A DNA stretch of 64,000 bases from Penicillus capitatus. Lineage: Eukaryota; Plantae; Chlorophyta. Positions 44,810-64,000 of the stretch are shown piece after piece. The DNA is taken from the NCBI GenBank assembly GCA_965649825.1, contig OZ287709.1, positions 372,001 through 436,000 of the forward strand, in the 5' to 3' direction. The stretch's first letter is position 1; the number at the start of each line of letters is the position of its first letter. A program made the translations under genes and the position numbers. Below the pieces are notes generated by a model, which saw only the letters and a program-made list of their open reading frames with translations, ran no database searches and was not told the DNA's origin.

Positions 44810-45075
44810 TGTCGGCAAGATGGCGATCTGTCGATGTGACTGTCTCGTGCACGAGGGTTGCACCTTGCTTTGGGACGCTTGGGGTCTTGTCATTCGGGGG
44901 TTTGGGCTGGAAAGGGGTCTTTTTCTCTGGTCCTGGAGCTGTGCTGAGTCACCTGCCTAGGCATGTCACGTCACCACAGGGGTATTTAATGGACAATCTG
45001 CACCTTGTTTCACCTTGCTCCAACAGTTGTAACAAGTCTTCCGCTGTTCATCTTTGTCCGACCCGACCGCCGACA
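44810..45075. mobile_element. Solo LTR, family B copy 1 (266 bp)
   Basis: Termini TGTCGGC...GCCGACA, flanks GTGCC/GTGTC (5-bp TSD with one mismatch), internal TATTTAA, ~80% identical to 61169-61437. Confidence 0.85.
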
Positions 45076-46165: not shown

Positions 46166-46573
46166 GGGTCGGTCTGTACACAGGACCAGCAATTCTGTTG
46201 TCCAAGATGTCGTCCAGACTGACAGTTCTCATACGATCGCATCTCTGGTACATTGATAGTGCGCCAAAGAAGACGTGTCGACGATCAGTGAAAGATACCA
46301 AGAGATCGATACCGTGATCCATACAGTAGGGGTACTTGCCTATGGAATGCTTCATCATCAATCCGAGAGGATTATGGATTTGAGTTTGGCTCCAAGCTAG
46401 GCATTCTTGCTGTGAAGAACTCCCTTTGGCAGCCTGACCCTCCACCTCCTTCACGGTGTCATCTGCATGGACACGTGTCTCTCCCTCGCCGTCCTGGCTA
46501 GGGAGATGCGGATGGGAGGCGTCGTCTCCTGAATCGTCTCCGTTTTGGCTCATCGCACAAGCACAGCAGAAGT

Positions 46574-47567
46574 TGTTGGCAGTCGGCGCGGCCTGGAGGT
46601 GGTCGACGGATGCCCCGCGGCGTTCTGCGCGTAGATACGAGACGCGCAAGACCAGAACCAATTGATTAATATTCATTGTCCTGTTCACAAATCTATGCTC
46701 ATCCACAGTTACTATCCACATGCTTCCCTGTGCACTCCGATCGGTAACTCTAATCGGCCAGCCAAACCACTGGAAAGCATGTCTTGTTCCGTCGCTTGGA
46801 TACCAGTGACAAGGAAGAATCTGATTATCACGATCCTCGTCTGCAGATGTGCAGATTCCAGCGCATCTTCTCCCGTGTCCACGGTTCGCCGACGCTTTTG
46901 CATGGTTGTCGGTCTTCAGTTCGACGATGGATGGCGCATTTTTCGCCAGACGGAGCAATCACCTCGCGCGGTACGTCATCCTCTGTCACCGCATGGTGTG
47001 TCCGTTCAGGCGTCCCATCGTCGGCCCCTTGGCTGGAGTTCCCCTGGCATGTCCGCGACGACACGTCAGCGCCACGCGACCTCCACTGCGCATCCACGAC
47101 TGCGCATGGAGTCGCCAGACTGCGACACCTCAGCCAGGCCGACGCGACCCCGCAAGACAGCACTACCGGCTGATGCGACCCGCGACAGACCTCCAACACA
47201 GCCCGTGCCGTCATTTATGCACAGGGGGGAACAAAGAGCGACGCTTCAGCAATACAATCTTCGTCTTCGGCAAACTCCAGAGGACAACAAATGTAGTCGA
47301 CAGTGTTTTTTCAACCCTCGGCAGTTATCCGTCGCCTCCAGGACTCCGACTGAGAGCTTCGTCTTGACGAGCATTGCGTTCAGCGGAAGCATTAGGAGCA
47401 CCTCGCGCTCCGAAACCATCTGTTGGCAGTCGGCGCGGCCTGGAGGTGGTCGACGGATGCCCCGCGGCGTTCTGCGCGTAGATACGAGACGCGCAAGACC
47501 AGAACCAATTGATTAATATTCATTGTCCTGTTCACAAATCTATGCTCATCCACAGTTACTATCCACA
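46574..47567 (-). mobile_element. TRIM-like miniature LTR retrotransposon (994 bp)
   Basis: Identical 147-bp TG..CA LTRs (46574-46720, 47421-47567), 5-bp TSD GAAGT, PBS TGGTTTCGGAGCG 2 nt after the 5' LTR, purine tract AGGGAAG before the 3' LTR, no recognisable intact gene. Confidence 0.93.
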
Positions 47568-48414
47568 GAAGTCTTGAAGCAAGATGAAAGTAGGCGGGCA
47601 AGGACGATGGAGGAAAAACCAAAGTTCTATCCAAGAGACAGCTCGTTGCAACGACGATAGACAGCAGATTTTTTGACAAGCAGATTGTATGCAATTCACA
47701 GACACAAGTGTAAACTTAGATGTCAAGCAAAAGATGATTCATGTGTCCATCCCTCGGTTTCATACTCAACTAGTGACCGGACCGACAGGACAAGTTAAGA
47801 ACAACCCGTGAAGTTAAAGAGTGAGTTCCCGATGAGATTCTATAAGTTTCTAAAGAACTTCACTATGAAAATCACCAATAGTTCGCAGTCCTTGTCATCA
47901 CGGCTACCTTGCAGCACCCTCACAGCCAGAGGCGCAAAACCGACAAGTGATAAACAAAATGCCGCCGATTACAATGACGTCCCATCAACGTTCCCGTTCG
48001 AATGGCGCTGCCATATTGTGGCACTTACAACGACAGCTGCCATCTTGGAACGTGTGCTACTCAGAAGGCATGTCTGTTCGCATCTGTCGCGTCGTTGCTC
48101 GGAACTGCCGGTGTTGTGGCGGGGCGGCCGCTCGAACGATCAATGCAGCGGAAGTCTTTACAGGCTCGGAGCAGAAGCATTTCAAAGTTCAGAATCGCAC
48201 ATTTATACCCGCAAATTGATGTGACTCACCGAGGCAGGTTCAAACACCACAGAAACACGCCTCAGATGAGTCATCAGTGTCTCTCTGCGCGATGAACCCC
48301 TTCACCACAAGACAGAATGACATGACCCCTTGTCGAAGACAACATGGGCCCACCCCTTTCGCTTGCGTATACTCCGAAAGCAGGTAAAACCCCCACGAAA
48401 AACAAATAATCAAA

Positions 48415-49446
48415 TCAGTCTATGCCCGAGGTGAATCGTCGCAGCGCCGAGAAGATGGTCCAGCCCGAGGATGATGATTCTTCTGTGTTCGGTTCCCCCG
48501 CTCTCTTCTGAGAATCCGATGTCGTCGGATTCGATGACTCAACCATATCCGTAGTCCGCACTCGCGGACAATCCTGTGCCAGGTGCCCCTTACATCGACA
48601 GCTGTAGCAGATCCGTCCGCGTCTCATGGCTCCGCCATCGTCTGCCGCGTCGGCCGTCTTCTCTCTTCGCCGTCGCCGCGGATACCGCCCAACGTCGTGC
48701 AACACTCGTTTCATCTGTTGCAAAGTCTTTTCACTTCGTCGATTCCCCTCTGGTTTCTTCGCCATCAACTCGGTTGTCGTCCTGACATCCCTTTGTAGCG
48801 TCTTCACCTCGTCGGCCAGTGACTGTAGACATGGCACCAAGTCAGGTGCCGAAATATACTTCTGTTTCTCCTCTGCGAAGGCGGATTCCGTCTCTTCAAG
48901 CCTCTGTTTCGTGGAGGAGGCTTCCTCGATAGCCTCGTTTGCATCCTGGTGCGCCTTGTTGATGTCTTGTTTTGCTTCGGAAATGTCCTTCTGCAGTTCT
49001 GCGTTGATGGCCGCAAGTCGCTCGATTTCTGCTGTCGCCTCGGCTACCTCGCGTCGTAAAAGCTCGACCGACAGTCCCCTTGCAATACCACTTGATTCGG
49101 AAGCCTGCAGCGTCGCTTGTAACTCTTCCTTCTCGTCTCGCAAATCTCGCTTTTCCCGAAGCCATTTCTCCTTTTCGTCTTGCGAGTCTCGCCGTTCTTT
49201 CAGCCGCGGACAAATATTCCTTAGAAACTCAAACATGCAATCTTCGTCTACCAACAAGTAGGAAAAATCGTCGTTGTGATCATCTGGCTGTATCCAAACG
49301 CGAAAACCGTGAAGTCTGGGGCACAGCCCTTCGTCTTGACCAAAATACGCAAAGAGACTTTCCTCGTAACCGCGTATACCATAAACCCCGTGGCTGCCAC
49401 CCTCGACGTGACCCTGCTCCCTTCTTCTTTGTCGTGCTCGACTCAT
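48415..49446 (-). CDS. Element-encoded coiled-coil + CCHC zinc-knuckle (Gag-like) protein, 343 aa
   Basis: Intact ORF with a long heptad-rich region and CYSCRCKGHLAQDCP. Its TGA stop is the first 3 nt of the 3' LTR. Confidence 0.85.
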   Translation of the reverse strand: MSRARQRRREQGHVEGGSHGVYGIRGYEESLFAYFGQDEGLCPRLHGFRVWIQPDDHNDDFSYLLVDEDCMFEFLRNICPRLKERRDSQDEKEKWLREKRDLRDEKEELQATLQASESSGIARGLSVELLRREVAEATAEIERLAAINAELQKDISEAKQDINKAHQDANEAIEEASSTKQRLEETESAFAEEKQKYISAPDLVPCLQSLADEVKTLQRDVRTTTELMAKKPEGNRRSEKTLQQMKRVLHDVGRYPRRRRREKTADAADDGGAMRRGRICYSCRCKGHLAQDCPRVRTTDMVESSNPTTSDSQKRAGEPNTEESSSSGWTIFSALRRFTSGID

Positions 49447-49632
49447 CCTTGACAATTCGCTTCTCGAAATTCCTTGTGCCTAGGTGTGCCTAGTCAGGAC
49501 TCAACGGGCGCAAAGCACACAGCAAATGCGCAACGTCACACAGACGGAGTTCAAACTGAGGAACGTTTAACAACGCTCCGAAACCATGTTGTGGCGGGGC
49601 GGCCGCTCGAACGATCAATGCAGCGGAAGTCT

Positions 49633-49682
49633 TTACAGGCTCGGAGCAGAAGCATTTCAAAGTTCAGAATCGCACATTTATA
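49633..49682 (-). promoter_or_regulatory. TATA box and TGTAA poly(A) signal within the 306-bp LTR
   Basis: On the minus strand, TATAAAT (49676-49682) is followed by TGTAA (49633-49637), consistent with U3-R-U5 order and a chlorophyte poly(A) signal. Confidence 0.6.
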
Positions 49683-50247
49683 CCCGCAAATTGATGTGAC
49701 TCACCGAGGCAGGTTCAAACACCACAGAAACACGCCTCAGATGAGTCATCAGTGTCTCTCTGCGCGATGAACCCCTTCACCACAAGACAGAATGACATGA
49801 CCCCTTGTCGAAGACAACATGGGCCCACCCCTTTCGCTTGCGTATACTCCGAAAGCAGGTAAAACCCCCACGAAAAACAAATAATCAAATCACCGGACAG
49901 ATAAACTATGGCATGGCGAGCAGCGCCCTCGATCATGCAGCTTTGCAATACGCTGAGCAAGGAAAGCATGTCTTGAGTACTCAGCGGGGAGCCTGGACGG
50001 GACGTGGAGTGGCAGCACAGGAACGCATCACCGTTGCCCGAGTTGAGCGTATGGGAATGCATTTGATTCAACCAGAGATGGACCTGATGACACTGTTAGC
50101 TATACTAAGATACTCTGTCTGCGACGGTTCTGCCATTGTTTACTTCAACTGGCCCAAGTTTGCAGCGGCGAATCAAAATTTGACAGCCGCCATCTTCTCT
50201 GAGAATGTCGCACATGTCGACATACCACAATAGACACCGTCACAATC

Positions 50248-51427
50248 TCAGAATGCAGTCTGACGGGTACGCGAGAACGGTTCTGGCCCCGCGGACCGGA
50301 CAGGCTGTCCGCTTCCTGACGCGACAGGAGTCCGCGTGGGCCAGGGGTATTTATGTGACAGGCCGCACCATGCTGTAGTCTTAGCTTTGACTCCTTGCAG
50401 TCCCTCCGCATTCGCACACGCGTCGGCGCGTTCGCGGCGCGCCAGAGTCTGCCGCATCCCCGTCACAGTCCCAGCAGGAATGCTGGCTGACACAGCGACA
50501 GAGAGTGTCCACAGCATTTTGAGAGTGTGTGTGAGGATGATTTTCTCATGGAAGACGGATTCGATTTTCGCGAAAGCGTCGAACCGCGCTCCGCTATGGA
50601 ATCGAAATTTAGCAAACTGTTACCGAGCACACTTGTTTTTTGACTATCCATTCTACCGTCTCTGCCATTTCGCGTCTGAAAATTCCCTTCTTCGCCCCTC
50701 AGATTCCGTTGATGTCACATCGCATACCGACGAAGCTGTCCCGGCCGCGCATACCGACGAAGCTGTCCCGGCCGCGCATACCAACGAAGCTGTCCCGGCG
50801 GCGCATCCCGACGCCCCCGACGCCCCCGACGCCTCTCCTAGCGGCGAAGTCGAAGGCCTTTGCGCCCCACCCTCAGCTCCCGTCTCCGAGATGTGAACTT
50901 GATGACCGTTGAGCACTACTCCACCCCTCGCCACGGCACGGTCGACCGCATCAGCCGCATCAAAAAAGGCATATCCCTCCCCCGTCGGGTTCCCTGTCCG
51001 GTTGTCGACCACTACAAGAGAAAAAATGACATCGTCAATATACGCAATAAGTTTTCATACCCTGCTCGAGTCGCTGCACGGGTTCGCCGAGGATTCTCTC
51101 TAGCTCGAGGTGGTTGAGTCGACGAAGAAGGTCCGCCGGGTCCGTGCTTGTTGGCAGATTCTGCAGCCGGACTCTGTGCGTCTGCTCCACCTCCATTTCC
51201 TCCCCTGGCTGGATGTCGTCGAGAGATGGTTCTGCGTCCATCTCGACGTCTGCTGGAGGCTGGTGCTGCTCTGGAGGCGGCAGTGGGGTTTCCTTAGACA
51301 AAACAAGTAATTGTTAGGGTTATAGTGGCGGTTTTGGGGTTGTGCTTACTTGGCCTGTGGCCATGGCGCGAATGCGTTCGATGGCTCTTCTCTTCGATGC
51401 TCTATCGTATGGGGTGCGTGAAGACAT
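50248..51427 (-). CDS. RRM-containing protein, spliced; 3' end uncertain, may be a pseudogene
   Basis: Canonical introns join ATGQ|ETPLP..VRLQNLP (RNP2)..RLEQ|VVDNRTGNPTGEGYAFFD (RNP1). Confidence 0.6.
50722..50833. repeat. Tandem repeat: 3 x 27 bp followed by 3 x 9 bp
   Basis: GCATACCGACGAAGCTGTCCCGGCCGC x3, then CCCGACGCC x3; in frame within the RRM ORF. Confidence 0.9.
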
Positions 51428-51527
51428 GCTGTGGCGGTTGGTCGAGAGAGAAACGAAGACAAATGGTTTGTGTAGCAGAAAACACGGAAACGATGTGGCA
51501 GAACGCAGATTAACGCATTCGTCACAA

Positions 51528-51614
51528 TGGCAGTGGTGACGGTTTCGTCTGCGCTGGCGACGGTGGTGGCAGTGGTGACGGTTTCGTCTGCGCTGGCGAC
51601 GGTGATGGCAGTGG
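51528..51614. repeat. Tandem repeat, ~2.2 x 39 bp
   Basis: TGGCAGTGGTGACGGTTTCGTCTGCGCTGGCGACGGTGG repeated. Confidence 0.9.
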
Positions 51615-51981
51615 CAGTGGGACGGTGGCACAGGTAACGCATTCGAAAAGAAGGTTTCTTTACAGAACGACAGTCGAACAACAATCCTGAAGGTTTTCCC
51701 CGCCCAGGATGAAATATGGAGACAAAACAAGAATCCGCAGCCTTCATGTCTGTGTCTCAATTTCATGAGCCTCGCGAAATTCGGTCAGGAGACGGTCGTA
51801 AGTACTAGACGGAGACAGTGTGTGTGGTCTTGTTGAAGCTTCTCACACAGAATGAACATGTCAATGGTAATCTGTTTATACCCGACAACGACTAGCACGT
51901 ATGCCATCACTCGATCCCTTGTCAAAAATCTCATCTTCCAGGCTCTTTTTTCGTTCGCGGAACGATCCTTTGGCGATTTTC

Positions 51982-53833
51982 TCACTCTTCTGTTTGCTCT
52001 TGCATTTCTCCGCTTGGTCCAGCTCCATAGGGGTCTTCCGACTGAGGGCTGCTCCCCAACACACTCAGGAGCTCACGCAATCTTCGCAGGAATGCAGCTG
52101 CGTCGCCATCGCCTCTGGTGTCTCCATCGCCCACGTCCGATCTTCTATCCAGCAGATGTGGGTCGAGTCCTTCCAGCAGTCGTCGCAGCTGAGGGAACAG
52201 TGCCCGGGAGCTCGTGGAATCCCCGTCGCCACCCATGACCCGTTCAATATCTTCCAAGGAAACGCCGCCCAGTTCGCCTAGAACAGCCAGTCTGACTCGC
52301 AGACCTCGCAAATCGACGGATCGCCTTGATCGAAGTCACCCCCACCGACGATGATCTCTTCGTCTGCGTCACCAACGAGGTTCACATTGACTTCGGAAGA
52401 CGGTGGCTCATCTGGTATCTCTTCAGCCTCGTCTGTATCAACATGTGCCCAATCCAAATCCGGAGGAGAGCGCACGGCATCGTCCTCTTCTTCATCTGAA
52501 ATAACAGATACAGGACGGAATGCAAAGACGAACACGATGAATATTCATGGTCACCTTCAGGATGCTCTTCACCGAGATCTTGGCTCTCACCTGTTTGCGC
52601 AGAAGCTTCCCCTGTTGCTTCTCTTCGTTCAAGTGGATCTGTATGATTCTCACGAGCTGGGGATGATGTCGATGTTGGTGTCTCTTGTTGATCTGCCGGG
52701 ACATGAGACCGATGCAAAAGTGTCGACACGGACAATTCCATGTTATTCCGCGTCCTTTCGAGAGCATCGCGTGCCTGTCTCGCATCGCTCATAGGATATC
52801 GCAACGACAGCATCGCGGACGTACATGCTCCTCGTTGAAACCCATGTCTATCAATTGCTGAACGAGTTCGGGCTGTGCAGCAACGCGCGGTCGATGACGT
52901 CTTCGTCCATAGAGTGACCTCAATGTCGCCTCCGGAATTGGTTCTGCTGCATCGTCATCGTCTTGATGCTCGCAAATCCAATTCAAAGCAGCCTGTGTAT
53001 AAAACCAGACGTCCACCCTTAGAGAATCGTTCACCGTGATGCTGAAAGCACCGAGAGATTGTTTCTGTGCAGAATGAGTGCCTTCCGTGCAATGTCTGCC
53101 GGAATGCCCATTTCCTCTGTCAGTGAACACATATGTTGTGGATCAGGTTCCGGTACTTGATAGGATGCACTCTCCACCCTCTCTTCCTGGAGAAAAGACC
53201 CATCCTCTGGACATGTGTCACAAACCGACACCCGTACTTGATTCTGTGGGTCTGTCGTGAGGGATCGTGTTCCCAAGCTCTCTTCCAGAGCATCAATGAT
53301 CACCTGCAGCTGATCTGCACCAAAAACAGCACGGTCTGTTGATGCCAGGTTCCGTGGACGCGGCCGGGGTCCTTCAGGTGCTGTCAGCTTTGATTCCAGT
53401 CCATGTTTAGCAGCGTAGGCTTTGATAGCCTCCTCGATTTCGACAGATGTTGGTGCCTAGCCACAGCATTCGTCCTTCCTCCATAGCTGAATCGCGAGCC
53501 AACCTCCAAAGGTTGTCTTGCTGGTGGTGGTGGAGGGCTCGGAACAAAAAGAATCACAACGGCATCACCCGATTGAATGCCTGCTTCTTCAAGGGAGCCC
53601 TCGTGCAAAGCTCTGCCATCATAGACCTGCGCACAAAGACGGTTTTCTTCAGAGACTGTGTGCTGGTTTGTTACAATATTCTGGTTGTCGGGAGTGGGTA
53701 TGTTCAGTCCTGTGAGTCGCTTCGCGGTTGCGGCCTCGTGCAAGTGCTTCTTGAATTCATCGACCGTCAAACCAGGAGGCACTGAGTGGAATTTGCAACT
53801 TCCTTGCAGTGTGCGAATCGTCAAATCGAACAT
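51982..53833 (-). CDS. UBL-UBA-UBA protein, UBAC1/KPC2-like, spliced
   Basis: N-terminal ubiquitin-like domain (VYDGRAL..EAGIQSGDAVVIL), UBA1 SLTEMGIPADIARKAL..AALNWICEH, UBA2 QQLIDMGFNEEH, acidic tail. Confidence 0.8.
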
Positions 53834-54664
53834 CGCTTCGGACTAAAATCGCTTGTCATGGCACGGCGTTCCATCGAACATGATGTGACATGACACTGTG
53901 TTTCAACACGAGATCACACAATAGATAGACGCCACGCATAGCTCAGAGGATCGGTCATCCCTGTATTGGCATGCTGTGTGTAAAGATGTGCACTAGGGAA
54001 CTGGCATCGGACGGCAGCACTGTCGACTGTGTGACCATGTCTCGGTCCCAGCGAGATGTTAGATCTATTTCACTGTGATAAGTTTGTGTGAATGAACTCA
54101 CTGTGCATGCAAGGGTTAAGTATAAACGGTTGTATTCTTGATGATTGTGTGATTCTTATGCAAGGGTGGATGCCGTGTAGGTTGCGTGAGAACGGGCACG
54201 GGGCATAAGAATGTTTTCTGCAAAGCATCGGGAACGTTGCATGGATTTACACACTCGCTTTTTGAACACTGTGCAACTGGCTGGTCTGTGTATATCTGAG
54301 GCGCCGGATTTCGTCGGAGCACATCCAAAACGCCAAACATTAACCGAAATGTATAAAATCATCGAATCTTCGCTTTTGACTGTATGTGGGTTCAGAGACC
54401 AATGAAGAATCTTGTTAAGGGGACAAACATAGTGAGGGGGTCTTTCGAAAAAAGAGCAGACATTGCCTCGATCATTTTCAAGATCTGGACATATGTTCGA
54501 GACATCGATCGGCGATTCAGATGATATCGTCTTTTCACATGACTCCCGTCAACAGTTCTCCACACTGGCTAAACACTTTGACACCAACGACATCATCGTC
54601 ACCGCCAACGCCAACAACAATGAATCTCGTTACCCACAGGAAAATGTGTACAAATGGCGATCCG

Positions 54665-55655
54665 TCAGGGTGCGACAGTTTGAGACAGAATGGTGTTCAC
54701 ACAAAAGTGCTGAAGGAAGGGAATAATGCCATTGAAAAAACCATAGGATTTTTTGAGCGTTCCTCCGAAGGCCATTGCTAAGGCACCCATCCCGGAAGAG
54801 CAGAGTGTGCGTGTTAAGCACCACGTCCCTCTACAAATCTGGAAAGATCCGTGTGCGAAGCCAATCAAAGCACCACCATAGAACCCAACCAATGCTGCCA
54901 AAATCATCTGAGCCGAAATGGCGGCCGTCGAAACGACCGTCAGCATCAGAGCGGGCAGCTGAAGAGAATTCCACAGCGATCCAATGAGGACTAAAATGGG
55001 ATAACATGTCCCCACAGAGCTCACATACCATCTGATCTTTTCCAAACCGAAACGAGCGCCGCTCTCAAAACCTTTCAATCCACGTAGGATACCTCGATAG
55101 AATCCATTTGCCAAAAGTATCATTTTCCACACCTAAAAAGCCATAAGGTCAGGCCGTGTGTATGAGAAGGGGGAGAATGGTAGTTACATCCATAACCACT
55201 TGCCAAACTGGACTCCCTAGAAGGCTATACATCAACTCCCTGGCTTCCTCAACCGTCGGGAGGTGTCCGCCCAAAAGCTTCATTCCAGAAAAAGGCGCTC
55301 GTCGCACACGGTATCTTTCTTTGCAAATGTCACACCTAGGATCTCAGGGTTACACTTCTGAGCGTGGCATCCTTCCACACCTGTAAGATTTTCTCAAAGC
55401 GCCTTGACTGCGCTGAGTGCGTTGCCATGCTCCAAGACAGCGTCGATGGATGAAACGAATGGTGCCTGTGCAACGGCAGGGCGACAGCAGTTCGCCGCCA
55501 GTCTCGCTATCGGCGGGTTGCCAACAAAAACGACAGACGCTGTCTTCCTCTTCGTCGTCGAGATCTTTGACAAGCGCCCTCTGCTGATGCAGAGAACAGA
55601 TGGGGGTCGTGCGTCCTGGTCGAGCAGCTCTTCCTCGAAATGGACGCAACGGCAT
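54665..55655 (-). CDS. RING-CH (RINGv/MARCH-type) E3 ligase with C-terminal hydrophobic segments, spliced
   Basis: CRFC..LLSPCRCTGTIRFIHRRCL..SYR|CDICK, spliced onward to the TM-rich exon at 54665-55132. Confidence 0.85.
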
Positions 55656-55793
55656 CGTGCCTGACACGCGAATCACCAACGACAACTACGGAAACGCAAC
55701 GATGAAAAGACGCCACGCATTGTGAAGACTCCTGTTTGTACGTTCGCTTTTTTCTCACGCCGCTCCGTGCGCCTTCACACCCTCTCCACGTTT

Positions 55794-57366
55794 ATGAGGT
55801 AACCAGCCCATCCTTGGTCTCAGACATGTCCTCCGTTCACACTCTCTGCAGCAGCAAAGAGGAAAAGCCAACACTTAAAGGTGTTAGCGTCAAGCAAAGG
55901 AAGCGTAACATCGCCGTTCCCTTGGACCCCGGGGCATTTGCTACGGAAGTGCTGACGGTGTTTGAAGAACACGCATCGGTTGGGAGTTCGGACGAAGAGA
56001 AGCTCGAGTCCGCCATCAAGGCGTTGGACACATCGGACTTGGATTTCAATCGCTATGGAGACACGCTGTTTGAGATACTGTTCGCTGGAAAACGCATGGC
56101 CACGGGGGCAAACCTTGTTACGGACCAAGGAAAGGAACTCAAAACAAACGTCTGTCATACAAACCAAAGGATGCCCCATCACCCATACCGCCCTGTCCTG
56201 TCTAGTTATTAGCCTGTGAGCCGGAACGCAAAGCCGTCTATCCCTACGTCAAGATCTTCCAGACGCTCGTCCGGTAATCTGTTTGACATCTGGCTGGACC
56301 TGTCCTTCGAGATGACGTGGATCTAGGCGTCGCCCTTTTCTGGTAAAGAATCTCGAAAATGTTCTGGTTAAGCTCTTAATGTCTTTGGAGTTCTTCGATG
56401 ACGTATCCCGAAAGAAACTTGCCATTGGTGAGGTCATTGTTGAGTGGGAGATGGAAGAGAGCATGTGCTGGATGTTCTGTAGCGACATCTTTGGTATTCA
56501 ATCCATCGATGCGTATTGGCGTGCTGCCCGAGAATGTCTTATCTGCGCTGGCCAATGATCGTCTGGTTCAGCGGGGAACAATTCTTGAATTCATTACCAT
56601 CTTCTTCCAAGACTTCCTCTCTGGTAGTACTTTAGATGAATTGGTAACACTTTTGACGAGGGCCAAGGTGGCGGCGCAGCTCTTTGATTTCTTTCCCCCG
56701 CAGAAACGCTCGTGGTCAGCCATGGCGGAGCATTTTAATCCAGCTGGACTGGCGCCTCTTGTCCAGTGGTACAAGAAAAAAGTGATCGATGTGAAGACAA
56801 CGGAACTTAAGGATTACCTACTGGAGCTGATCGATGAGGACACATCTCCGGATGAGATCTCTTCTGTTGTTAAGGAGAAGGCGACGGAAGGAGAATTGCC
56901 TAACGAAGATGTGCTGAGAGTCGTATGGGAAGTGCTAATCAAATCTATCAATATGACAGGAAAAAATGCACAACAACTAAGGCAGCTTCTGAACCGTACG
57001 CTCACGAACAACGCACAGCTTCTGACACACTTTGCCTCATCTCCAAAGCTCGAGGCAGCTCTCCTCGTTATCATTCAAGTCTGCCTGTAGTGCCATACGA
57101 CAGGCTAGAAGTTGACAGGACTGATGTGATAGGTTCATTGCTATGAAGATACGCGATTGCTAAAGCTCTTCTCCGACATCGTCCGCATCGTCTACGATGC
57201 TGAGATCGTGGGAGAAGACACTATTTTCTACTGGTATCGTAAAGGGAGTCATGCCAAAGGACGGAATGTTTTCCTCAAAGACATTGAGCCATTCATCTCC
57301 TGGTTAGAAGAAGCAGAAGAAGAGGATGAAGATGATGATGAAGAGGATGAAGATAATGATTCATAA
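55794..57366 (+). CDS. eIF5-mimic protein (BZW/5MP, W2 domain), spliced
   Basis: MS|SKEEKPTLKGVSVKQRKRN, LDFNRYGDTLFEIL, LVRRRPFLVK, EDTIFYWYRKGSHAKGRNVFLKDIEPFISWLEEAEEE. Confidence 0.95.
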
Positions 57367-57401
57367 AGCAGACATCCTCTCCTCTAATGATTAACATGCA
57401 G

Positions 57402-58699
57402 TCAGCTGTTGTTGTTATTCCCATTGCTGCTTTGAATCCACCTTTGAATAAACTGTGGCATTGAGCCGAAAGGATAGCCCTATGAACATTCAGCGATGCC
57501 CACATGGGCGCGAGCGTCAGATACAGAACCATGCTGTTGAGGAGGAGAGCATAACATAGCTGTAGGATGTGCGTGTAGAAGAAACCTAGACGCAGCAGGG
57601 GTCTTGTCAGACAAGAAGAGAGAGATCACGTGCACGCACACCTCTGATGATCAAAAATCCTAGAAGAGCTGCATTGACCGTCGATGCAGAGGGCGAAGCT
57701 AGACAGCAACATAGAATGTCCGAAGGCAAAGAGATCGATTCTTGCTGTTTACCTTGAATGCCACAAAGCGACGAGATCTTTATCTAGACATTAACAGAGT
57801 GAGCATCACAGCAAGACAATGACCAGGAAGCGCATACCACCAGTGTGTAGACATTGTATGTGACGAGCTTGAAGAGATTCTCTCTCAGTAAGAAGCCGGC
57901 GACGTAGATGTAACAGATCATTCCTGTGGCGTATGAGAGCGTGCATGCGATCCATGTTAACCACCACGGACATCTCAAATGCCACAGGAACCCCAATGTC
58001 AAGCCAATGAATCCATAGAGCAAGACATAAGTGACAGCACGAGGGGGTCCGAGAAGGACTGTGTAACGCGATGTGATAGAAGAGTGAGATGAAGCACGGT
58101 ATACCAATGGTCAGGAAGAACGTTGCAACGAGGGTCTTACGACTCGCGGCCGGTCCGGATCGAACAGCGGCCAGTACGAGAGGAAACGGCAGCAGATAAT
58201 GCATGTAAGCATCAAGCCGCAGGATTCCGAGGAGCAATTGGCAGACGCCCGAGACAGAGGCCAACATGGACGTCTCCACTAAAACCTGACACCATGGCTG
58301 AGCAACATGGTCTGTCAGACACCACCATACCTTTGCTGAAGGCAGATCGTAGATCTGTGCTGCCGCATCTTCTGCAGAAGATGCGTTCGATGCGTCAAAT
58401 GATGCAGCATGCAATCTCCGACAGAATCTCTGGGGTCCAAAAATTGAACACACGACTGGATGTCGCCGATGGACCTGCTGTCGATTGGAAGATCGACAAA
58501 GTGAGATGCTGTTTCTAACAGATCGAGGTCTCTCTTCTTCTGTCCAAGCGACACTCTCCGACGGAGATATCTGCGGAGTGCTACTCTTTGGCCAAAGCGC
58601 TCGTCTTTGCGTTGTCACGCAGGTCCCGCGAAGGGATGGCAATCCGAATCGTCGATCGACCGACGCTCGGACCTTCATGTCCTTCTGTGTCGCTGTCAC
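57402..58699 (-). CDS. DUF2232 (YybS-like) membrane protein with probable plastid transit peptide, spliced
   Basis: LVETSMLAS, LLPFPLV, LLGPPRAVTYVLLYGFIGLTLG, GFLLRENL; C-terminal GYPFGSMPQFIQRW. Confidence 0.8.
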
Positions 58700-58829
58700 A
58701 TCACCCAGACCGATACCAACGCATCTCTGTTGGTAAACGCTATGCGTTAGCTTAATGGCAAACGGGTAACTGTTCCACCAACCTTGGTCCAGTCAGTCAT
58801 ACGACATTAAGTGTTGCGCATGGTCGCCG

Positions 58830-60385
58830 ATGAGTTTTAGCGGAACCTCACTTCAGGAAGCCATCCGAATCTCCGAGGCTGCCTTTCCCTTTCGACGCGG
58901 TGCGTCTCCAGGTTTTGGCGGAGGCAGTGTGGCCTCGGAGATTCCGGAACCGAGCGTCCTTCCAGAACTGCCGGCAACGCATGCACAAACCGCAGCCCTA
59001 CGCCTTGGGGAGAATCCCGATGAATCATGCAGTCTTTCAGTGATGGGACGTACCGAAGCAGGTAAGAGAAGAGAAGAGATGCGGAGAAGCTGTCATACAT
59101 CGTAGGGCATCTGCTAAATGGAACACTATCCAGTCAAGATGCCATGAATCTCCTGAGCACACGCAACAAACCGCACAAGGTGTGGAGAAAACGCTATGCG
59201 AAGTTGCTGGTGGTGGGTGATGCGGGATTGGGCAAGACAACCCTCATTCGAACCCTCCTGTCCATCCCAGGGCAAAAAATCAAAGTACTCTTACCTTAAT
59301 GCCTTCCTCCGATCAATGGACGTCGTTTTCAGTTGCATGATGGGACAGAGTCCAGCATCGAGCAGTTTCGCAAAAATCCTGCATCGTTGTGTTCACAGAT
59401 CTGCTGGAGAGATGAAGAGGATCGCGTAGAGTGGTATTACACGGTGCAGGATACACCTGGTTACGGAGACAAAATCAATATTCGTCATAACATTGACGCA
59501 ATGGTCGATTTTGTGATCGAGCAGAACCAGAAGTGGTTCGATATTGAGACAAGCAAGAAACGACCCGCTGACATGTCATCGATCGAGGATCCCAGAATCG
59601 ATGTCTGTCTATTTTGCTTACCGCCCCATCGACTGCGCTACGTGGATGTGCGTTTCATGCACGAATTGGGCAAAGTGGTGCCCATTATTCCGCTCATTAC
59701 AAAGGCGGATACCATGAATATTCGCGAAGCCACCATCTACCGACAAGAAGTGCACAGCAAACTGCAGAATGTGTCACAGTTCGGTTTGAGAGGCAAGATT
59801 GGTCTGTTTGAATTTAAGAAGGAGACGATGGAACGCGCCTGGATCGATCCTTCACTATCGCAGTGCCAGATGTTGCCGTTGCTGATCGTGGCCAGCAACG
59901 AAGTCAATATGGAGCTTAACCAAAAAGGAATCTTCTGGCCAGAAAGGCAGTATGCATGGGGAACATGCGAGGCCTTCAACCCTGATCACTCAGATGTCCT
60001 CCAACTGCGGCTGCTGCTTCTGAAAGAAGGCCTCGAAGAGATTTCAGCAGCCAAACTCGAAAGGTGTCTCCCCTTCTGCATTATGTCAATTTCTGTCAGG
60101 CGTCGAGATCGTGTGCGTTTGTGCAGATATGAGCTATGGAGAAGAAAACGATTATCGAAACTCAGAATGGGATTCCATCTAAAAATCATGGTTTTGGCGT
60201 CCACTGCGTACACAGCATTCAGTGTGGGATCATCCTTAGCCAGTGGCAAAGATCCCAGGAGAATTATGATCGATGCTGCACAGCTTCTAATGGGACGGAT
60301 TCGGATGCTGTCCCGCCTGCGACCTCGCAAGAAATCTACACCCCCATCCGCGCTGTCCAAGAAACAGAAAAAGATGCTCGGCTGA
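58830..60385 (+). CDS. Septin (non-opisthokont/chlorophyte type), spliced
   Basis: LVVGDAGLGKTT (G1), QDTPGYGD (G3), RIDVCLFCLPPHRLR, IITKADT (G4), ERQYAWG and HSD septin-unique element. Confidence 0.93.
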
Positions 60386-61168
60386 GATGATGACCACTCT
60401 ATTAAGTGAATAGACGATGTGTCCGACTCCTCGTGTGAGATGACTACATTGGGTACACAACTACAAACTCTCAAGTGTAAGCTTGACTGCCATTTGCTAC
60501 TGAATAAGGGTCCTGATCGCAACCCGCACTACACGAGTAGACAGCGATGGTATCCCTAAAAAGAAAGACGGCTTCTTTGTCGCCGAGGGTTCTCTGCTAC
60601 CAGACATAAGTGCTCTTCTCTGGACCCAAGAAATGAAGGACGTGATGCATATTCCATTAAGAAGATTTTCCAATTCTGCCATCCGTCGAATTACAAAGAA
60701 ACCGTCGTAGCGGATAGTTGTGGTTGTTTATCGACGCATTTCGTCCGCAAAACCCCCTACAACGCATTCGACGCAGTAATGCCAAGATTAGTTTCGACCA
60801 GTTGTTGTGAGATTTGCAGTTCGCAAACGACGCCTGGAGCAACGGCGAGCTACTGGACTACGGAGAAATGGGCGACGATTCTCTGTTCAGCCAGGAACGT
60901 TCTGAAAGACTAAGAAGAACGCGAAACGTGTTCGGATTCGGATTCGGCAATACGGTAAGTGTATCAAACAAAACCTGGAATGCCGACACGGGTACGCATC
61001 CCTCCCTGTATCTATTCTGTGGCTTCAGAAGAAGGCGCATTCGCCGAAATGAGTGTGGAAAGGCCCTTCAGAGATGATGCTTGGATGCGTTGGCGAAAAA
61101 TCCTTCGAGATGACAGAAATGGCTGGCGGCAAGGGACGCGATGAAGCGCCTTGACGGGTGGAGGTAGG

Positions 61169-61437
61169 TGTCGGCAAGATGGCGCTTTGCGGATGTGACT
61201 GTCTTGTGTAGGAAGGGGGCACCTTGCTCTGGGACACTCGGGGTCGTGTCATTTGAGGTTTTGGGCCGAGAAGAGGCCTTTTTCTATGGTCCTGGGGCAG
61301 TACTGAGTCACCTGCCTAGACATGTCGCATCACAACGAGGGTATTTAAGGGGACAATCCGAACCATGTTTACCTTGCTCCAAACAGTCTGCAAAGTCTTC
61401 CGCTGTGTTAATCTTTCGTCCGGCCCGATCGCCGACA
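61169..61437. mobile_element. Solo LTR, family B copy 2 (269 bp)
   Basis: Termini TGTCGGC...GCCGACA, perfect 5-bp TSD GTAGG, ~80% identical to 44810-45075. Confidence 0.9.
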
Positions 61438-62649
61438 GTAGGTTAGTAAGAACGGTGCGTCGTTTGGTAACTTCGAGTTAAGCGTCTTCCTTTAGGCTTT
61501 CCGGCGGAGTATTGTGAGAAGACTCTGAATGCAGCTAGCGCCTATCTAGCTTCTAAGGTGTTTCATGTCTTAAAGGAGATTCACATTGCAACAACATGTT
61601 CGACGGATATGGGAACGTGTGAGCGTTGCTGTGAACGTCGGCCAAACGACCGAGTCCGGACCGGATGGCGAGTCGCGCAGGAAAACTCCGTCAGCAATGC
61701 GTAGTTGCATAGCCAGACGAAACGACAGACGAGTTCTCTCGTTAAATACCTCGGAGAATGGAACATTAGACCATTACATTAGCCTCTCGTCTTCTTCACG
61801 CCAAGGGCTCAGCCACTGAATTGTCTGCTGGCGTGGCGCCAAGCGAACGGTTTGCACGCTGCAGCGACCTCTCGCCAGATGGCCCGAGGTGGAAGCTGAG
61901 GCACTCTTCACAGTCGCCAATCCATTTCAGTCTTACATTTCTCGTCTTGACTGACATGCTCGGGTATCGGATGTTTCCACCACAGGATACGACCGCAAAC
62001 AAGCCATAGGCACTAAACCTCGGGGTAGAAATAGGCGCTACCATCAAATACTGGCCATCAATCAGCTTAACTTCATCATCATCCAGTCCAATAGAGTGTC
62101 CTTTTTCTCTAAATTCTGTTACCGCATGCACTCAGGTATTCCGTTTTTGTGTCGTCTCAGCTTCGAACTGTCTTCTTAGGGAAACTCTGAAGAGATCTGC
62201 AAGCTCGACACAGACGGTGTAAGTTAACAGCCGATGGCGCAAGAAAACAAGGCGAAGAGTCGAGAGAACCAATGTGTAAAAAGACTGTTTGACTTCCTGT
62301 TTTATAATGACACCTAATTCGTTTCATTGAGTCAATTGTCATCATTCACTTCCACAACGGACACGGGCCTCGTAAAGATCTTTCAAGTCAGAGGGAGGCA
62401 AGCTGGGAGGACTGTGGAGCGAACAAGACCATTTACAAGGACTTTGACGGTTCCACTCTAATGCGAGGGTTTTCGCGACTCAGAAGAAACGACGAGAAGC
62501 CTAATACACCTGCCACAGAGTGCCTTGCGTCGTCGCGTCCACATCCTGTCCGATCGAGCTCGTGGCGTCGAGGGATTCATCTTTGTGATTCACTGATCTT
62601 CGTGCTGCGTCAACGTCTTCTGTAAGCTTATCAATTGTTCTTTTCATAT

Positions 62650-63129
62650 CGCTTATGGTTCTTGGATTTCATCAAGGACAGACACAGGCAGCAAAGCGAA
62701 CTGGGTATCACAATTATCCATATGTTGCAGAATACAGCCATAAAGCTGTGAGCCAACCACTTCAGCGACTTTATATCCCAAAACTGGAACACGTGCTTCA
62801 ACTACCGCATACGTTCGTGTTTCCACTCTTTGTGTATGACTATCGTATCTTCTTTCTTCAAATCGTCTGTTCATCTTGTCGAGCAAAATGGTTTGTAAAT
62901 GTCCTTTCAATTGGTGGATCCAAAACAGGTCTCGTCGAAAGCACGAAGCGAACGACGCAAAAACGCACGAAGCGGAGAGAACTGTAACGGAGGAGCTTAA
63001 AGCTCCGAAACCATGTAGCGTAAGAACCGAAACAGACTTAACAGGGGAAGTTCGTAACAATAGCAATGGCTCTAATGTTTTCATGTTCTTAAGGACCACT
63101 GTCGCATCATCTGTTAAAATAACACAACA
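62650..63129 (-). mobile_element. Truncated LTR element: candidate ~116-bp LTR + PBS + degraded internal ORF
   Basis: On the minus strand, TGTTGTG...GCTACA (63129-63014) is immediately followed by TGGTTTCGGAGC. No clear second LTR; the LTR's outer boundary is uncertain. Confidence 0.5.
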
Positions 63130-64000
63130 CTTCATCCTTACGGGACCGTTCTTGGACGAGAAGCATCCCGTTGTCTCCTCTGGAGGAGTCACGCGCTCGT
63201 TTCAGCGACTCTATCGACAGCAGGTCGAGCCTCTTTTGTACAAGATCGAGACTTATTGCCGCTTGCTCCTGTTGATTCCATCTGTCAGAGATGTGCATCA
63301 CAAGCCCATATTCCTTCAGCCTTCATTTCCCTCTCCCCTCTTCACGAGTAGTACGAAGAGAAACGTATTTTCCCTGCTTGATCCTGGAAACCTTAGTCAG
63401 CAGTTCTCTGCACTTTTATCGGAATGAAATGAACTGACGTGGGTGTGTGATACGCATGCAGCTGGAGTGTTCCTTATTGCCTGCAGTGAAAATGCGATTA
63501 AATGTCTAAACACGTCAACCTGTGAGTGGGATCAAACAAATCGCATGCACATTCTCTTCCGTCACAATCTCGGACAGAGAGAGGTCTTGTCATTCCTCAT
63601 GGACTGGTCGGCATTGTTCGGAACGGTGGTCGATCGATGGTGTAGTTTCTAACCCTGTTTTCTCCGGTCTTGGGTTCATGTTTGGATACCGCGTACGGCA
63701 GCAGACTTCTACGACATCCCCAGCTGGATGTAACTCATCACTCCTTCAGGTCCGATCAGCTTCGCAAAGTTCCTTTGTCAGACACAGGAGAATCGTCTGC
63801 CATGTATTCAGAAAGAGGACACTTGTTGGCAGATTGTGCTTCCGTCTCAATCCAAGCCGCCTGGTCAAGGGGAGCAAGTGGCAGGAAGAATCTATGCCTT
63901 GTTGAATGTCTTTCGGGAAGGAAATACTGAGACGGTTGATCTGGCCAACAAGTGTCAAGTGTCGAGTGGATATCGTAGGCATGTAAAGGATTATCATCAG

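What the first reader, a model, noticed from the sequence alone, without database searches (positions are those of the whole stretch)
47407..63013. Three unrelated LTR ends share the same non-canonical primer-binding site TGGTTTCGGAGC
Seen: the identical 12-mer on the minus strand at 47407-47418, 49575-49586 and 63002-63013, each 0-2 nt downstream of a CA-ending LTR or candidate LTR; the LTRs share no other similarity. Known: the common plant/algal initiator-Met PBS is TGGTATCAGAGC, and eukaryotic tRNA-iMet has A1:U72. This motif differs at two positions and implies a primer ending ...GCUCCGAA-A-CCA, i.e. A at position 72. Inference: either the host has an unusual iMet-like tRNA or another CCA-ended RNA primer, or a whole element lineage fixed the same mismatched PBS.
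Basis: partly seen in the sequence, partly recalled or inferred. Interest (0 to 1): 0.8.

Follow-up and report, generated by a model that had tools for sequence, protein, structure and literature searches.

The report
Retrotransposon primer sites match variant initiator-tRNA
Three small retrotransposons in a green alga's genome share one 12-letter primer site, which exactly fits a form of the translation-start tRNA whose first base pair is flipped (U1:A72) compared with almost all other eukaryotes.

Summary
TGGTTTCGGAGC occurs three times on the minus strand (0.01 expected), each 0-2 nt after a CA-ending sequence.

- **Site A:** a 994-bp TRIM with identical 147-nt LTRs and a 5-bp target-site duplication (TSD).
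- **Site B:** a 1781-bp gag-only element with identical 306-nt LTRs.
- **Site C:** no partner LTR in the window, so it looks like a truncated 5' end.

The same 12-mer sits directly after LTRs in four further small elements from two related genomes.

A pattern scan of public metagenomes recovered the matching primer. It is a tRNA-Met(CAU) with eukaryotic initiator hallmarks (GGG/CCC anticodon stem, A54, A60) and is 64/72 identical to plant iMet. It differs in having U1:A72 and G4:C69. Its 3' end plus CCA pairs 12/12 with the motif. The genes are multicopy on green-algal contigs from lichen-dominated samples.

The window's host is also a green alga (Chlamydomonas-type septin). A second box, CTTCCGCTG, complementary to the iMet D arm, lies near the primer-binding site (PBS) in unrelated elements, as in yeast Ty1.

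So these are ordinary iMet-primed elements that track a rare host iMet variant. S. pombe is the only published exception to A1:U72 that I found. The host's own iMet gene could not be retrieved, so that last link is inferred.

The parts
47407..47418 (-). PBS of element A (TGGTTTCGGAGC), 2 nt (GA) after the 5' LTR
   Evidence: 12/12 complementary to G65-A76 of the U1:A72 initiator tRNA
47421..47567 (-). 5' LTR of element A (147 nt, TGTGG...CAACA)
   Evidence: 100% identical to 46574-46720
46574..46720 (-). 3' LTR of element A; preceded by PPT-like AGGGAAGCA (46721-46729)
46569..47572 (-). Element A with its 5-bp TSDs (ACTTC at 47568-47572 and 46569-46573). A 994-bp TRIM-type element with no Pfam-recognisable ORF.
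47381..47390 (-). D-arm box of element A: GCTTCCGCTG, complementary to iMet nt 13-22, 16 nt downstream of the PBS
   Evidence: 3 of 300 shuffles reach 10 nt
49575..49586 (-). PBS of element B, directly after the 5' LTR
49587..49892 (-). 5' LTR of element B (306 nt, TGATTT...ACAACA; TATAAA 90 nt before its end). Contains D-arm box CTTCCGCTGC at 49620-49629.
48112..48417 (-). 3' LTR of element B (100% identical to the 5' LTR); D-arm box copy at 48145-48154
48415..49446 (-). Single ORF of element B (343 aa): small beta sheet, long coiled coil and a CCHC zinc knuckle (CYSCRCKGHLAQDC). Its stop codon TGA is the first 3 nt of the 3' LTR.
48108..49896 (-). Element B with flanking CCGG on both sides (4-bp TSD, or 5 bp with one mismatch). 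A 1781-bp gag-only (TR-GAG-like) non-autonomous LTR element.
63002..63013 (-). PBS of fragment C, directly after ...ACGCTACA and followed by hairpin GGAGCT-TTA-AGCTCC
63014..63300 (-). Candidate U5/LTR end of fragment C. Its extent is unknown, and no second copy exists in the window.
44810..45075 (+). Solo LTR (266 nt) of the B/L002 LTR superfamily. No PBS follows; flanks GTGCC / GTGTC.
61169..61437 (+). Solo LTR (269 nt) of the same superfamily with a perfect 5-bp TSD GTAGG

Best explanation
The 12-mer is a standard primer-binding site. It pairs with the last 12 nt (G65 to A76, including the added CCA) of the host's cytoplasmic initiator tRNA-Met. In this green-algal lineage that tRNA carries U1:A72 and G4:C69, where plants have A1:U72 and A4:U69.

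The elements are small non-autonomous LTR retrotransposons: a TRIM, a gag-only element and a truncated fragment. They borrow reverse transcriptase and integrase from an autonomous element that is not in the window.

Proposed mechanism (inferred from Ty1 and retroviral models):
1. The tRNA anneals to the PBS.
2. In most families its D arm also anneals to a second box, CTTCCGCTG, in U5 or the leader, as with the Ty1 boxes.
3. Minus-strand synthesis starts from the tRNA 3' end.
4. Plus-strand strong-stop synthesis copies the tRNA 3' end back into DNA. This keeps the PBS of new copies matched to the real tRNA.
5. Integration leaves 4-5 bp duplications.

Shown here: the element anatomy, the recent activity, the existence of the variant initiator tRNA in green algae, and the two complementarities. 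Inferred: that this host encodes that tRNA, and the replication mechanism itself.
For: 1. **PBS position.** All 3 window copies, plus 4 copies in related genomes, lie 0-2 nt after an LTR end. The related copies are L002:9847, L185:9826, L185:12402 and L186:9826.
2. **Recent activity.**
   - The LTRs of A and B are 100% identical and flanked by TSDs.
   - The B ORF is intact and has 33 homologues of about 220-500 aa, none polyprotein-length.
   - Identical copies sit at two loci of a sister genome.
3. **The matching tRNA.** A metagenome scan for a tRNA with this acceptor stem gave 46 hits, 36 of them tRNA-Met(CAT) by ARAGORN.
   - The major 72-nt sequence was found in 24 loci.
   - It has GGG/CCC in the anticodon stem and a GATCGAAACC T loop (A54, A60), and folds as a perfect cloverleaf.
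   - It is 64/72 identical to plant iMet.
   - T-rich runs typical of Pol III terminators follow the genes.
4. **Multicopy in green algae.** The same tRNA occurs at 3 or more distinct syntenic loci on Mb-scale contigs. Those contigs are green-lineage: their sugar transporter scores 83 bits to plant STP6/10 against 39 bits for the next hit.
5. **Host identity.** The window's septin scores 290 bits to PDB 5IRR against 88 bits for the next hit. I recall 5IRR as the Chlamydomonas septin.
6. **D-arm box.** A box of 9-10 nt complementary to the iMet D arm lies near the PBS in unrelated families. Only 2-3 of 300 shuffles reach that length for A and B, and an elongator tRNA-Met control gives only 6-mers. 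The box is invariant across diverged LTRs.
7. **Precedents.** Ty1 has a 10-nt iMet PBS plus extra boxes (PMC3592414). Plant TRIMs use a 12-18 nt PBS complementary to methionine tRNA (PMC3532108).
Against: - The host's own iMet gene was not seen. The window has no tRNA.
- About 84 kb from two related genomes yielded only an intron-bearing elongator tRNA-Met whose 3' end does not match.
- No protein or DNA similarity links the window to the tRNA-bearing contigs, so they may belong to a different algal class.
- Position 13 of the PBS is never the C that would pair with G64 of the recovered tRNA. Either complementarity stops at exactly 12 nt, or the host's T stem differs.
- No autonomous partner with this PBS was found. 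The one autonomous element seen (Ty3/gypsy-like, L185:6206-12338) uses a different PBS, TGGTGCGGTCACC.
- Fragment C lacks both a partner LTR and the D-arm box.
Confidence: 0.8

Rival explanations
1. The host has a canonical A1:U72 / A4:U69 initiator tRNA. These element families carry a PBS that mismatches it at two of 12 positions and have all fixed the same mismatched sequence.
For: The host iMet was not retrieved, so its sequence is unknown. Canonical plant-type iMet genes are abundant in public data.
Against: - A tRNA matching 12/12 exists in green algae.
- From established retroviral and Ty1 knowledge, plus-strand strong-stop DNA copies the primer's 3' end. Recently transposed copies (A and B have identical LTRs) should therefore often carry the tRNA's own sequence.
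- All 7 copies, from at least 4 LTR families in three genomes, carry the identical 12-mer.
- One of the two mismatches would lie only 5 nt from the priming 3' end.
Confidence: 0.06
2. The host has both a canonical initiator and a second iMet-like tRNA with U1:A72. The second is minor or not used for initiation, and it is the one the elements use as primer.
For: - My scans were aimed at the variant, so they cannot show that canonical genes are absent from the same genomes.
- Intermediate forms exist in public data: G4 with U72, and G4 with A72 in a plant-like anticodon stem.
Against: - The variant keeps every initiator hallmark tested except 1:72.
- It is present at 3 or more syntenic loci per genome.
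- It is conserved across related algae that differ by about 15-25% in flanking DNA, as expected for the working initiator.
- No canonical iMet was seen in about 500 kb of those contigs, although this sample is biased toward variant loci.
Confidence: 0.09
3. The primer is an elongator or organellar tRNA that happens to end GCUCCGAAACCA, for example a tRNA-Gln-like species.
For: Two bacterial tRNA-Gln genes (L125, L150) have exactly this 3' end with CCA encoded.
Against: - Those contigs are bacterial (73% and 30% GC, CCA encoded).
- No eukaryotic elongator with this end appeared among the 46 hits.
- The D-arm box matches the iMet D arm specifically, and an elongator control gives only 6-mers.
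Confidence: 0.03
4. Priming does not use a tRNA. The element RNA self-primes through the hairpin formed by the PBS 3' half and downstream sequence, or another CCA-ended RNA serves as primer.
For: Five of six PBS copies are followed by a 5-8 bp hairpin that uses GGAGC of the PBS. Self-priming is known for Tf1 in S. pombe (from memory).
Against: - The hairpin never covers TGGTTT.
- Its 3' arm is not followed by AAACCA.
- The conserved unit is the full 12-mer ending in TGG, the complement of CCA.
- A perfectly matching tRNA exists.
Confidence: 0.02

Closest known systems
[quoted passage not shown]
   Same: Element A fits the type:
- under 1 kb in length
- LTRs of 100-250 bp
- no coding capacity
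- PBS complementary to methionine tRNA
- PPT present
- 5-bp TSD

The definition comes from PMC3532108.
   Different: The host is a green alga. The PBS is TGGTTTCGGAGC rather than the plant TGGTATCAGAGC, tracking a U1:A72/G4:C69 initiator. There is no sequence similarity to plant TRIMs.
TR-GAG elements (terminal-repeat retrotransposons with GAG domain; Chaparro et al. 2015, PMC4350172)
   Same: Element B and its relatives are under 4 kb. They have LTRs, a PBS and one ORF in the gag position with a CCHC knuckle. They lack PR, RT and IN, appear active, and their relatives make 5-bp TSDs.
   Different: - The ORF shows no detectable capsid/Gag domain by Pfam, PDB profile search or AF2 plus Foldseek. 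The model is a beta sheet, a long coiled coil and a knuckle.
- B itself has a 4-bp TSD.
- The coffee TR-GAG1 PBS matches tRNA-Leu, not iMet.
Yeast Ty1 priming by initiator tRNA-Met with extended boxes
   Same: Both have a short PBS (10 nt in Ty1, 12 nt here) against the iMet acceptor end. Both also have extra complementarity to other parts of the same tRNA close to the PBS (PMC3592414).
   Different: Here the extra box targets the D arm only. It lies upstream in U5 in one superfamily and downstream in another. Its function is untested, and the elements are non-autonomous.
Schizosaccharomyces pombe initiator tRNA (Psi1:A72)
   Same: It is a eukaryotic cytoplasmic initiator with pyrimidine-1:A72 instead of A1:U72. 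The literature describes it as the only known eukaryotic exception (PMC5393177).
   Different: The variant is in a different kingdom. Apart from the acceptor stem it is close to the plant sequence, and some gene copies carry a 15-17 nt intron at 37/38. Whether U1 is modified is unknown.

Membership tests
LTR retrotransposon (structural definition) | Two direct long terminal repeats ending TG...CA | tested here: met
   A has 147-nt and B 306-nt LTRs, each pair 100% identical and TG..CA. Fragment C does not meet this: it has no second copy.
LTR retrotransposon (structural definition) | Target-site duplication of 4-6 bp | tested here: met
   - A: ACTTC/ACTTC.
- B: CCGG/CCGG.
- Relatives: GGAAG, GAAGG, AGATG.
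- Solo LTR: GTAGG.

From.
LTR retrotransposon (structural definition) | PBS complementary to a tRNA 3' end within a few nt of the 5' LTR | tested here: met
   12/12 match to the U1:A72 tRNA-Met(CAU) plus CCA, with a spacer of 0-2 nt.
LTR retrotransposon (structural definition) | Polypurine tract before the 3' LTR | tested here: inconclusive
   A has AGGGAAGCA. B has only GGGCATAGAC, which is weak.
TRIM | Very small size, short LTRs, no ORF, 5-bp TSD, Met-tRNA PBS | tested here: met
   Element A is 994 bp with 147-nt LTRs. It has no Pfam-recognisable ORF, TSD ACTTC, and an iMet-type PBS.
TR-GAG | Under 4 kb with a single ORF and no PR/RT/RNaseH/IN | tested here: met
   Element B is 1781 bp with one 343-aa ORF. 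All 33 homologues are about 220-505 aa, none polyprotein-length.
TR-GAG | The ORF is recognisably GAG (capsid/UBN2-type domain) | tested here: inconclusive
   Only the CCHC knuckle matches retroviral nucleocapsids, and weakly, plus the gag of a gypsy-like element. There is no Pfam hit. The AF2 model has no capsid fold, and no Foldseek hit reaches E<=0.001.
Eukaryotic cytoplasmic initiator tRNA-Met | CAU anticodon and three consecutive G:C pairs closing the anticodon stem | tested here: met
   GGGCCCATAACCC; typed by ARAGORN as Met(cat).
Eukaryotic cytoplasmic initiator tRNA-Met | A54 and A60 in the T loop (AUCGAAA instead of TPsiCRA) | tested here: met
   GGATCGAAACC in all major variants; GGATCGAGACC in a second type.
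Eukaryotic cytoplasmic initiator tRNA-Met | A1:U72 base pair | tested here: not met
   The pair is U1:A72 (TTCGGAG...CTCCGAA-A). It remains a weak A/U pair, as in S. pombe Psi1:A72 (PMC5393177).
Eukaryotic cytoplasmic initiator tRNA-Met | Functions in initiation (eIF2 binding, excluded from elongation) | not testable with these tools
   Requires biochemistry or genetics.
Eukaryotic cytoplasmic initiator tRNA-Met | Encoded in the genome that holds the window | not testable with these tools
About 84 kb of related genomes held no iMet gene.
Ty1-type extended primer-template interaction | Additional short boxes near the PBS complementary to other arms of the primer tRNA | tested here: met
   CTTCCGCTG(C) pairs with iMet nt 12-22 in A, B, L002, L185gag and the solo LTRs. 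CGCTGCGCC pairs with nt 9-17 in L185Y. Function is untested.

The most novel reading that the evidence does not exclude
A whole clade of green algae, including lichen-associated ones and the window's host, uses a U1:A72 initiator tRNA as its only cytoplasmic initiator. That would be a second, independent natural exception to the near-universal A1:U72 pair thought to be read by eIF2. The clade's LTR retrotransposons have co-evolved their PBS, and a D-arm box, with this tRNA.
Probability: 0.55. Interest if true: 0.65.

Novelty: new variant of a known kind. Interest (0 to 1): 0.55.

Why it matters
**For transposon biology** this is ordinary. TRIM and gag-only elements primed by initiator tRNA are known kinds. 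Even so, they are well-preserved, apparently active examples from a poorly studied green-algal lineage, and they carry a Ty1-like second tRNA-binding box.

**For tRNA biology** the more interesting part is what the PBS reports about the host. The A1:U72 pair of eukaryotic initiator tRNA is described as almost invariant and important for eIF2 binding, with S. pombe as the only cited exception. A multicopy U1:A72 initiator in green algae suggests two things:
- The constraint may be a weak A/U pair rather than its orientation.
- These algae are a natural system for asking how eIF2, Met-tRNA synthetase and RNase P cope with the flip.

**In practice**, LTR annotation tools that look for the plant iMet PBS or use a plant tRNA library will miss or mis-type elements in these genomes.

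Tried and rejected
- **Literature search for the 12-mer or its complement**: only unrelated PCR primers.
- **Exact AAR2 protein look-up to name the organism**: not on record. The nearest genome is an unnamed ENA metagenome assembly.
- **Scan of viral contigs for CA+PBS**: 118+ chance hits in phage contigs, uninformative. The tRNA pattern in viral contigs gave 0 hits.
- **Linking the window to the tRNA-bearing contigs** by blastn, tblastn and tblastx: no shared sequence.
- **A 90-nt ARAGORN call in L002:** it looked like a possible host iMet but is an intron-bearing elongator tRNA-Met.
- **T-loop pairing idea:** the PBS might pair with the initiator T loop, since 8 nt (CGAAACCA) match. Rejected as the main site because the 3' end matches 12 nt.
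- **Relating B's ORF to the gag of the gypsy-like element in L185:** only the zinc knuckle aligns.
- **Structure prediction and fold search of the ORF**: no capsid-like match.
- **Second LTR for fragment C**: not found.

Full report
**1. The observation.**

TGGTTTCGGAGC occurs exactly three times in the 64-kb window, all on the minus strand, at 47407-47418, 49575-49586 and 63002-63013. Chance predicts 0.01 occurrences, and no shuffle out of 100 reached three. Allowing two mismatches adds only background-level hits.

Read on the minus strand, the contexts are:
- ...CTGCCAACA-GA-TGGTTTCGGAGC
- ...GCCACAACA-TGGTTTCGGAGC
- ...ACGCTACA-TGGTTTCGGAGC

The window holds no tRNA gene (ARAGORN) and no Rfam family at gathering score.

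**2. What the three sites belong to.**

*Site A* is the primer-binding site (PBS) of a complete 994-bp element.
- The LTRs, 47421-47567 and 46574-46720, are 147 nt, 100% identical and run TGTGG...CAACA.
- The 5-bp TSD is ACTTC on both sides.
- A PPT-like AGGGAAGCA precedes the 3' LTR.
- No Pfam-recognisable ORF is present.

This is a TRIM.

*Site B* is the PBS of a 1781-bp element.
- The LTRs, 49587-49892 and 48112-48417, are 306 nt and 100% identical. They run TGATTT...ACAACA and contain a TATAAA.
- CCGG flanks both sides.
- A single 343-aa ORF lies at 48415-49446 on the minus strand. Its TGA stop codon is the first three bases of the 3' LTR.
- The ORF has a CCHC knuckle (CYSCRCKGHLAQDC).

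*Site C* has no partner. Nothing in the window repeats 63014-64000, and a septin gene lies 2.6 kb downstream on the other strand. C is best read as a truncated 5' end.

Two further LTRs of B's superfamily lie on the plus strand as solo LTRs: 44810-45075, and 61169-61437 with a perfect TSD GTAGG.

**3. The family outside the window.**

B's ORF has 33 homologues at 36-100% identity. They are about 220-505 aa, none polyprotein-length, and all lie on large ENA metagenome-assembly contigs.

*Locus L002* (another genome, ORF 53% identical) holds a gag-only element with about 250-nt LTRs and TSD AGATG. The identical 12-mer sits 2 nt after the 5' LTR.

*Loci L185 and L186* come from the sister genome. 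Its AAR2 protein is 91% identical to the window's and its DNA about 85% identical.
- Identical copies of another family member sit at these two different loci.
- Each has 124-nt LTRs, with TSDs GGAAG and GAAGG, and again the same 12-mer.
- L185 also holds an unrelated small element with the same PBS. Its 5' LTR is split by a 6.1-kb Ty3/gypsy-like autonomous element.
- That autonomous element has TSD ATGGT and a different PBS, TGGTGCGGTCACC.

In this lineage, therefore, all 7 exact 12-mers lie 0-2 nt after an LTR end or, for C, a candidate one. They span at least four unrelated LTR families, all non-autonomous.

**4. The host.**

The window encodes ordinary eukaryotic genes: AAR2, a MORN protein, a septin, a HAD hydrolase, a soluble fumarate reductase, a bicarbonate/borate transporter and a 5MP/BZW protein. 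Introns are few and GC is about 51%.

The septin scores 290 bits to PDB 5IRR, against 88 bits for the best animal or fungal septin. I recall 5IRR as the Chlamydomonas reinhardtii septin. The best named AAR2 relatives are land plants, at 35-39% identity.

I conclude that the host is a chlorophyte green alga with no named close relative in the searchable collections.

**5. The primer.**

The motif implies a primer ending GCUCCGAAACCA. That gives an acceptor stem of UUCGGAG/CUCCGAA and discriminator A73.

I scanned the metagenome collection for TTYGGRGT, a gap, GWTCRANNCNNNGCTCCGAAA. Of the 46 hits:
- 36 are typed tRNA-Met(CAT) by ARAGORN, and 2 more as Tyr(ATA) because they carry an intron.
- 2 are bacterial tRNA-Gln with CCA encoded.
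- The remaining 6 got no ARAGORN call. Three of these are the same intron-bearing gene and three or four look like chance matches.

The major sequence, found in 24 loci, is TTCGGAGTGGCGCAGCGGAAGCGTGGAGGGCCCATAACCCTCAGGTCCCTGGATCGAAACCAGGCTCCGAAA.
- It folds into a perfect cloverleaf.
- It has the three G:C pairs of the initiator anticodon stem.
- It has A54 and A60 in the T loop.
- T-rich runs typical of Pol III terminators follow it.
- It is 64/72 identical to the plant initiator as I remember it. That memory is independently borne out by plant-genome ORFs translating to QSGAAEAWWAHNPQVPGSKPGSD.

The only differences that matter here are U1:A72 and G4:C69. Its last nine bases plus CCA are the exact complement of the 12-mer.

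Some copies carry a 15-17 nt intron at the canonical 37/38 position. A second sequence type (GATCGAGACC T loop) occurs in tandem arrays with tRNA-Gly or tRNA-Asn in other metagenomes.

**6. Where that tRNA lives.**

Most hits come from the Antarctic cryptoendolithic rock metagenomes, which sample rock-dwelling microbial communities and which I recall as lichen-dominated (PMC7171226).

To reach assemblies that cannot be scanned as DNA, I used the fact that four of the six reading frames across this tRNA gene are open. I searched the protein database with the four 23-24-aa peptides.
- About 35 spurious ORFs contain exactly the U1:A72-type peptides.
- About 55 contain the plant type.

Their contigs include two NCBI assemblies (GCA_030012865.1, on a 2.55-Mb contig, and GCA_030012885.1) and several ENA HiFi metagenome assemblies.

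The tRNA sits at 3 or more distinct syntenic loci: sugar transporter/XRN, Sdh5, and ProRS/U-box/DUF4379. The sequence is unchanged between relatives whose flanks are only 75-85% identical.

These contigs are about 48-50% GC and intron-rich. They encode a hexose transporter far closer to plant STP6/STP10 than to GLUT-type transporters. That indicates a green alga, plausibly a Trebouxia-like lichen photobiont; the genus is my inference.

**7. A second line of evidence for iMet.**

A box complementary to the initiator's D arm lies close to the PBS.
- CTTCCGCTG(C) pairs with tRNA nt 12-22. It sits 34-43 nt upstream in U5 of B, L002, the L185/L186 element and both solo LTRs.
- It is the longest invariant block in that part of the diverged LTR alignment.
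- GCTTCCGCTG sits 16 nt downstream of the PBS in the unrelated element A.
- The small L185 element has CGCTGCGCC (tRNA nt 9-17) further downstream.

In shuffle tests, 3/300 (A) and 2/300 (B) shuffled flanks reach 10 nt. An elongator tRNA-Met control never exceeds 6 nt.

This mirrors Ty1, whose 10-nt iMet PBS is supplemented by nearby boxes (PMC3592414). The D arm is the same in the canonical and variant initiators. The box therefore identifies the primer as initiator tRNA, while the PBS itself specifies the U1:A72/G4:C69 acceptor stem.

**8. Mechanism and what is inferred.**

Element anatomy, recent activity and both complementarities are shown. The replication scheme is carried over from Ty1 and retroviruses:
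1. tRNA annealing.
2. Minus-strand strong stop.
3. PPT priming.
4. Plus-strand strong stop that copies the tRNA 3' end.
5. Integration with 4-5 bp duplication.

That scheme also argues against a fixed mismatched PBS. Fresh copies inherit part of their PBS from the tRNA itself, yet seven copies from four families are identical.

The missing link is the host's own initiator gene. About 84 kb of related-genome DNA contained only an intron-bearing elongator tRNA-Met, and my contig look-ups were exhausted. No autonomous partner carrying this PBS was seen.

**9. Comparison with what is known, and novelty.**

Element A meets the TRIM definition, and plant TRIMs use a methionine-tRNA PBS (PMC3532108).

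Element B resembles TR-GAG elements (PMC4350172). However, its ORF shows no capsid domain by Pfam, PDB profile search or AlphaFold plus Foldseek. The model is a small beta sheet, a long coiled coil and a knuckle, with mean pLDDT 66. Gag identity is therefore unproven.

The literature states that eukaryotic and archaeal initiators almost systematically carry A1:U72. It cites one eukaryotic exception, S. pombe Psi1:A72 (PMC5393177). I found no paper describing an algal U1:A72 initiator. This shows only that none is in the searchable library.

My verdict is a known kind of element using a known kind of primer, but tracking a rare and apparently undescribed initiator variant.

Noticed in passing
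window 49620-49629, 48145-48154, 47381-47390, 45038-45046, 61397-61405; L002:9805-9813; L185:9792-9800: A conserved box, CTTCCGCTG(C), is complementary to the D arm (nt 12-22) of the initiator tRNA. It lies in U5 in one LTR superfamily and in the leader in an unrelated TRIM, like a Ty1-type second primer contact.
   Followed up: yes
window 47395-47411, 49559-49579, 62992-63006 (minus strand); L002:9854-9872; L185:9833-9845: In five of six PBS copies, the 3' half of the PBS (GGAGC plus following bases) pairs with sequence immediately downstream. This forms a 5-8 bp hairpin that would occlude part of the PBS.
   Followed up: partly
window 44810-45075 and 61169-61437 (+): Two solo LTRs of the same superfamily as element B and the L002 element. 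The second has a perfect 5-bp TSD (GTAGG); the first has GTGCC/GTGTC.
   Followed up: yes
window 48415-48417: The stop codon (TGA) of element B's ORF is formed by the first three bases of the 3' LTR, so the ORF fills the whole internal region.
   Followed up: yes
L185:6141-13460: Three-level nesting in the sister genome. A small iMet-PBS element has its 5' LTR split by a 6.1-kb Ty3/gypsy-like element (TSD ATGGT, PBS TGGTGCGGTCACC). That element in turn has a gag-only element inserted in its pol region.
   Followed up: partly
L124, L142, L151, L160, L161, L163 (metagenome loci): These U1:A72 initiator tRNA genes carry a 15-17 nt intron at the canonical 37/38 position. ARAGORN typed some of them wrongly as Tyr(ata) or did not call them.
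   Followed up: partly
L128:3765-3777, L137:1548-1560, L144:2723-2735, L177:12282-12294(-): In the tRNA-bearing algae, the 13-mer TGGTTTCGGAGCT is the only invariant block in a region otherwise about 67% identical. The region lies upstream of a DUF4379 zinc-ribbon ORF, about 2.2 kb from an iMet gene in three of the four loci (L128, L137, L177). It could be a retroelement leader or something that binds the initiator tRNA.
   Followed up: partly
tRNA sequence from L121 and 23 other loci: The variant initiator contains CGAAACCA twice: in the T loop/stem, and at the 3' end once CCA is added. The first 8 nt of the PBS could therefore also pair with the T loop.
   Followed up: no
L002:16366-16455: An elongator tRNA-Met gene with a 14-nt intron in the host lineage. 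ARAGORN reported it as 'tRNA-??? (cata)'.
   Followed up: yes
L125:10790-10863, L150:4106-4179: Bacterial tRNA-Gln genes (73% and 30% GC contigs) have the same acceptor stem and the same 3' 12 nt, with CCA encoded.
   Followed up: no
window 50721-50813 and 51528-51605: Short tandem repeats of 27 nt (three overlapping copies) and 39 nt (two copies) lie just beyond the transposon cluster. They are possibly coding repeats.
   Followed up: no
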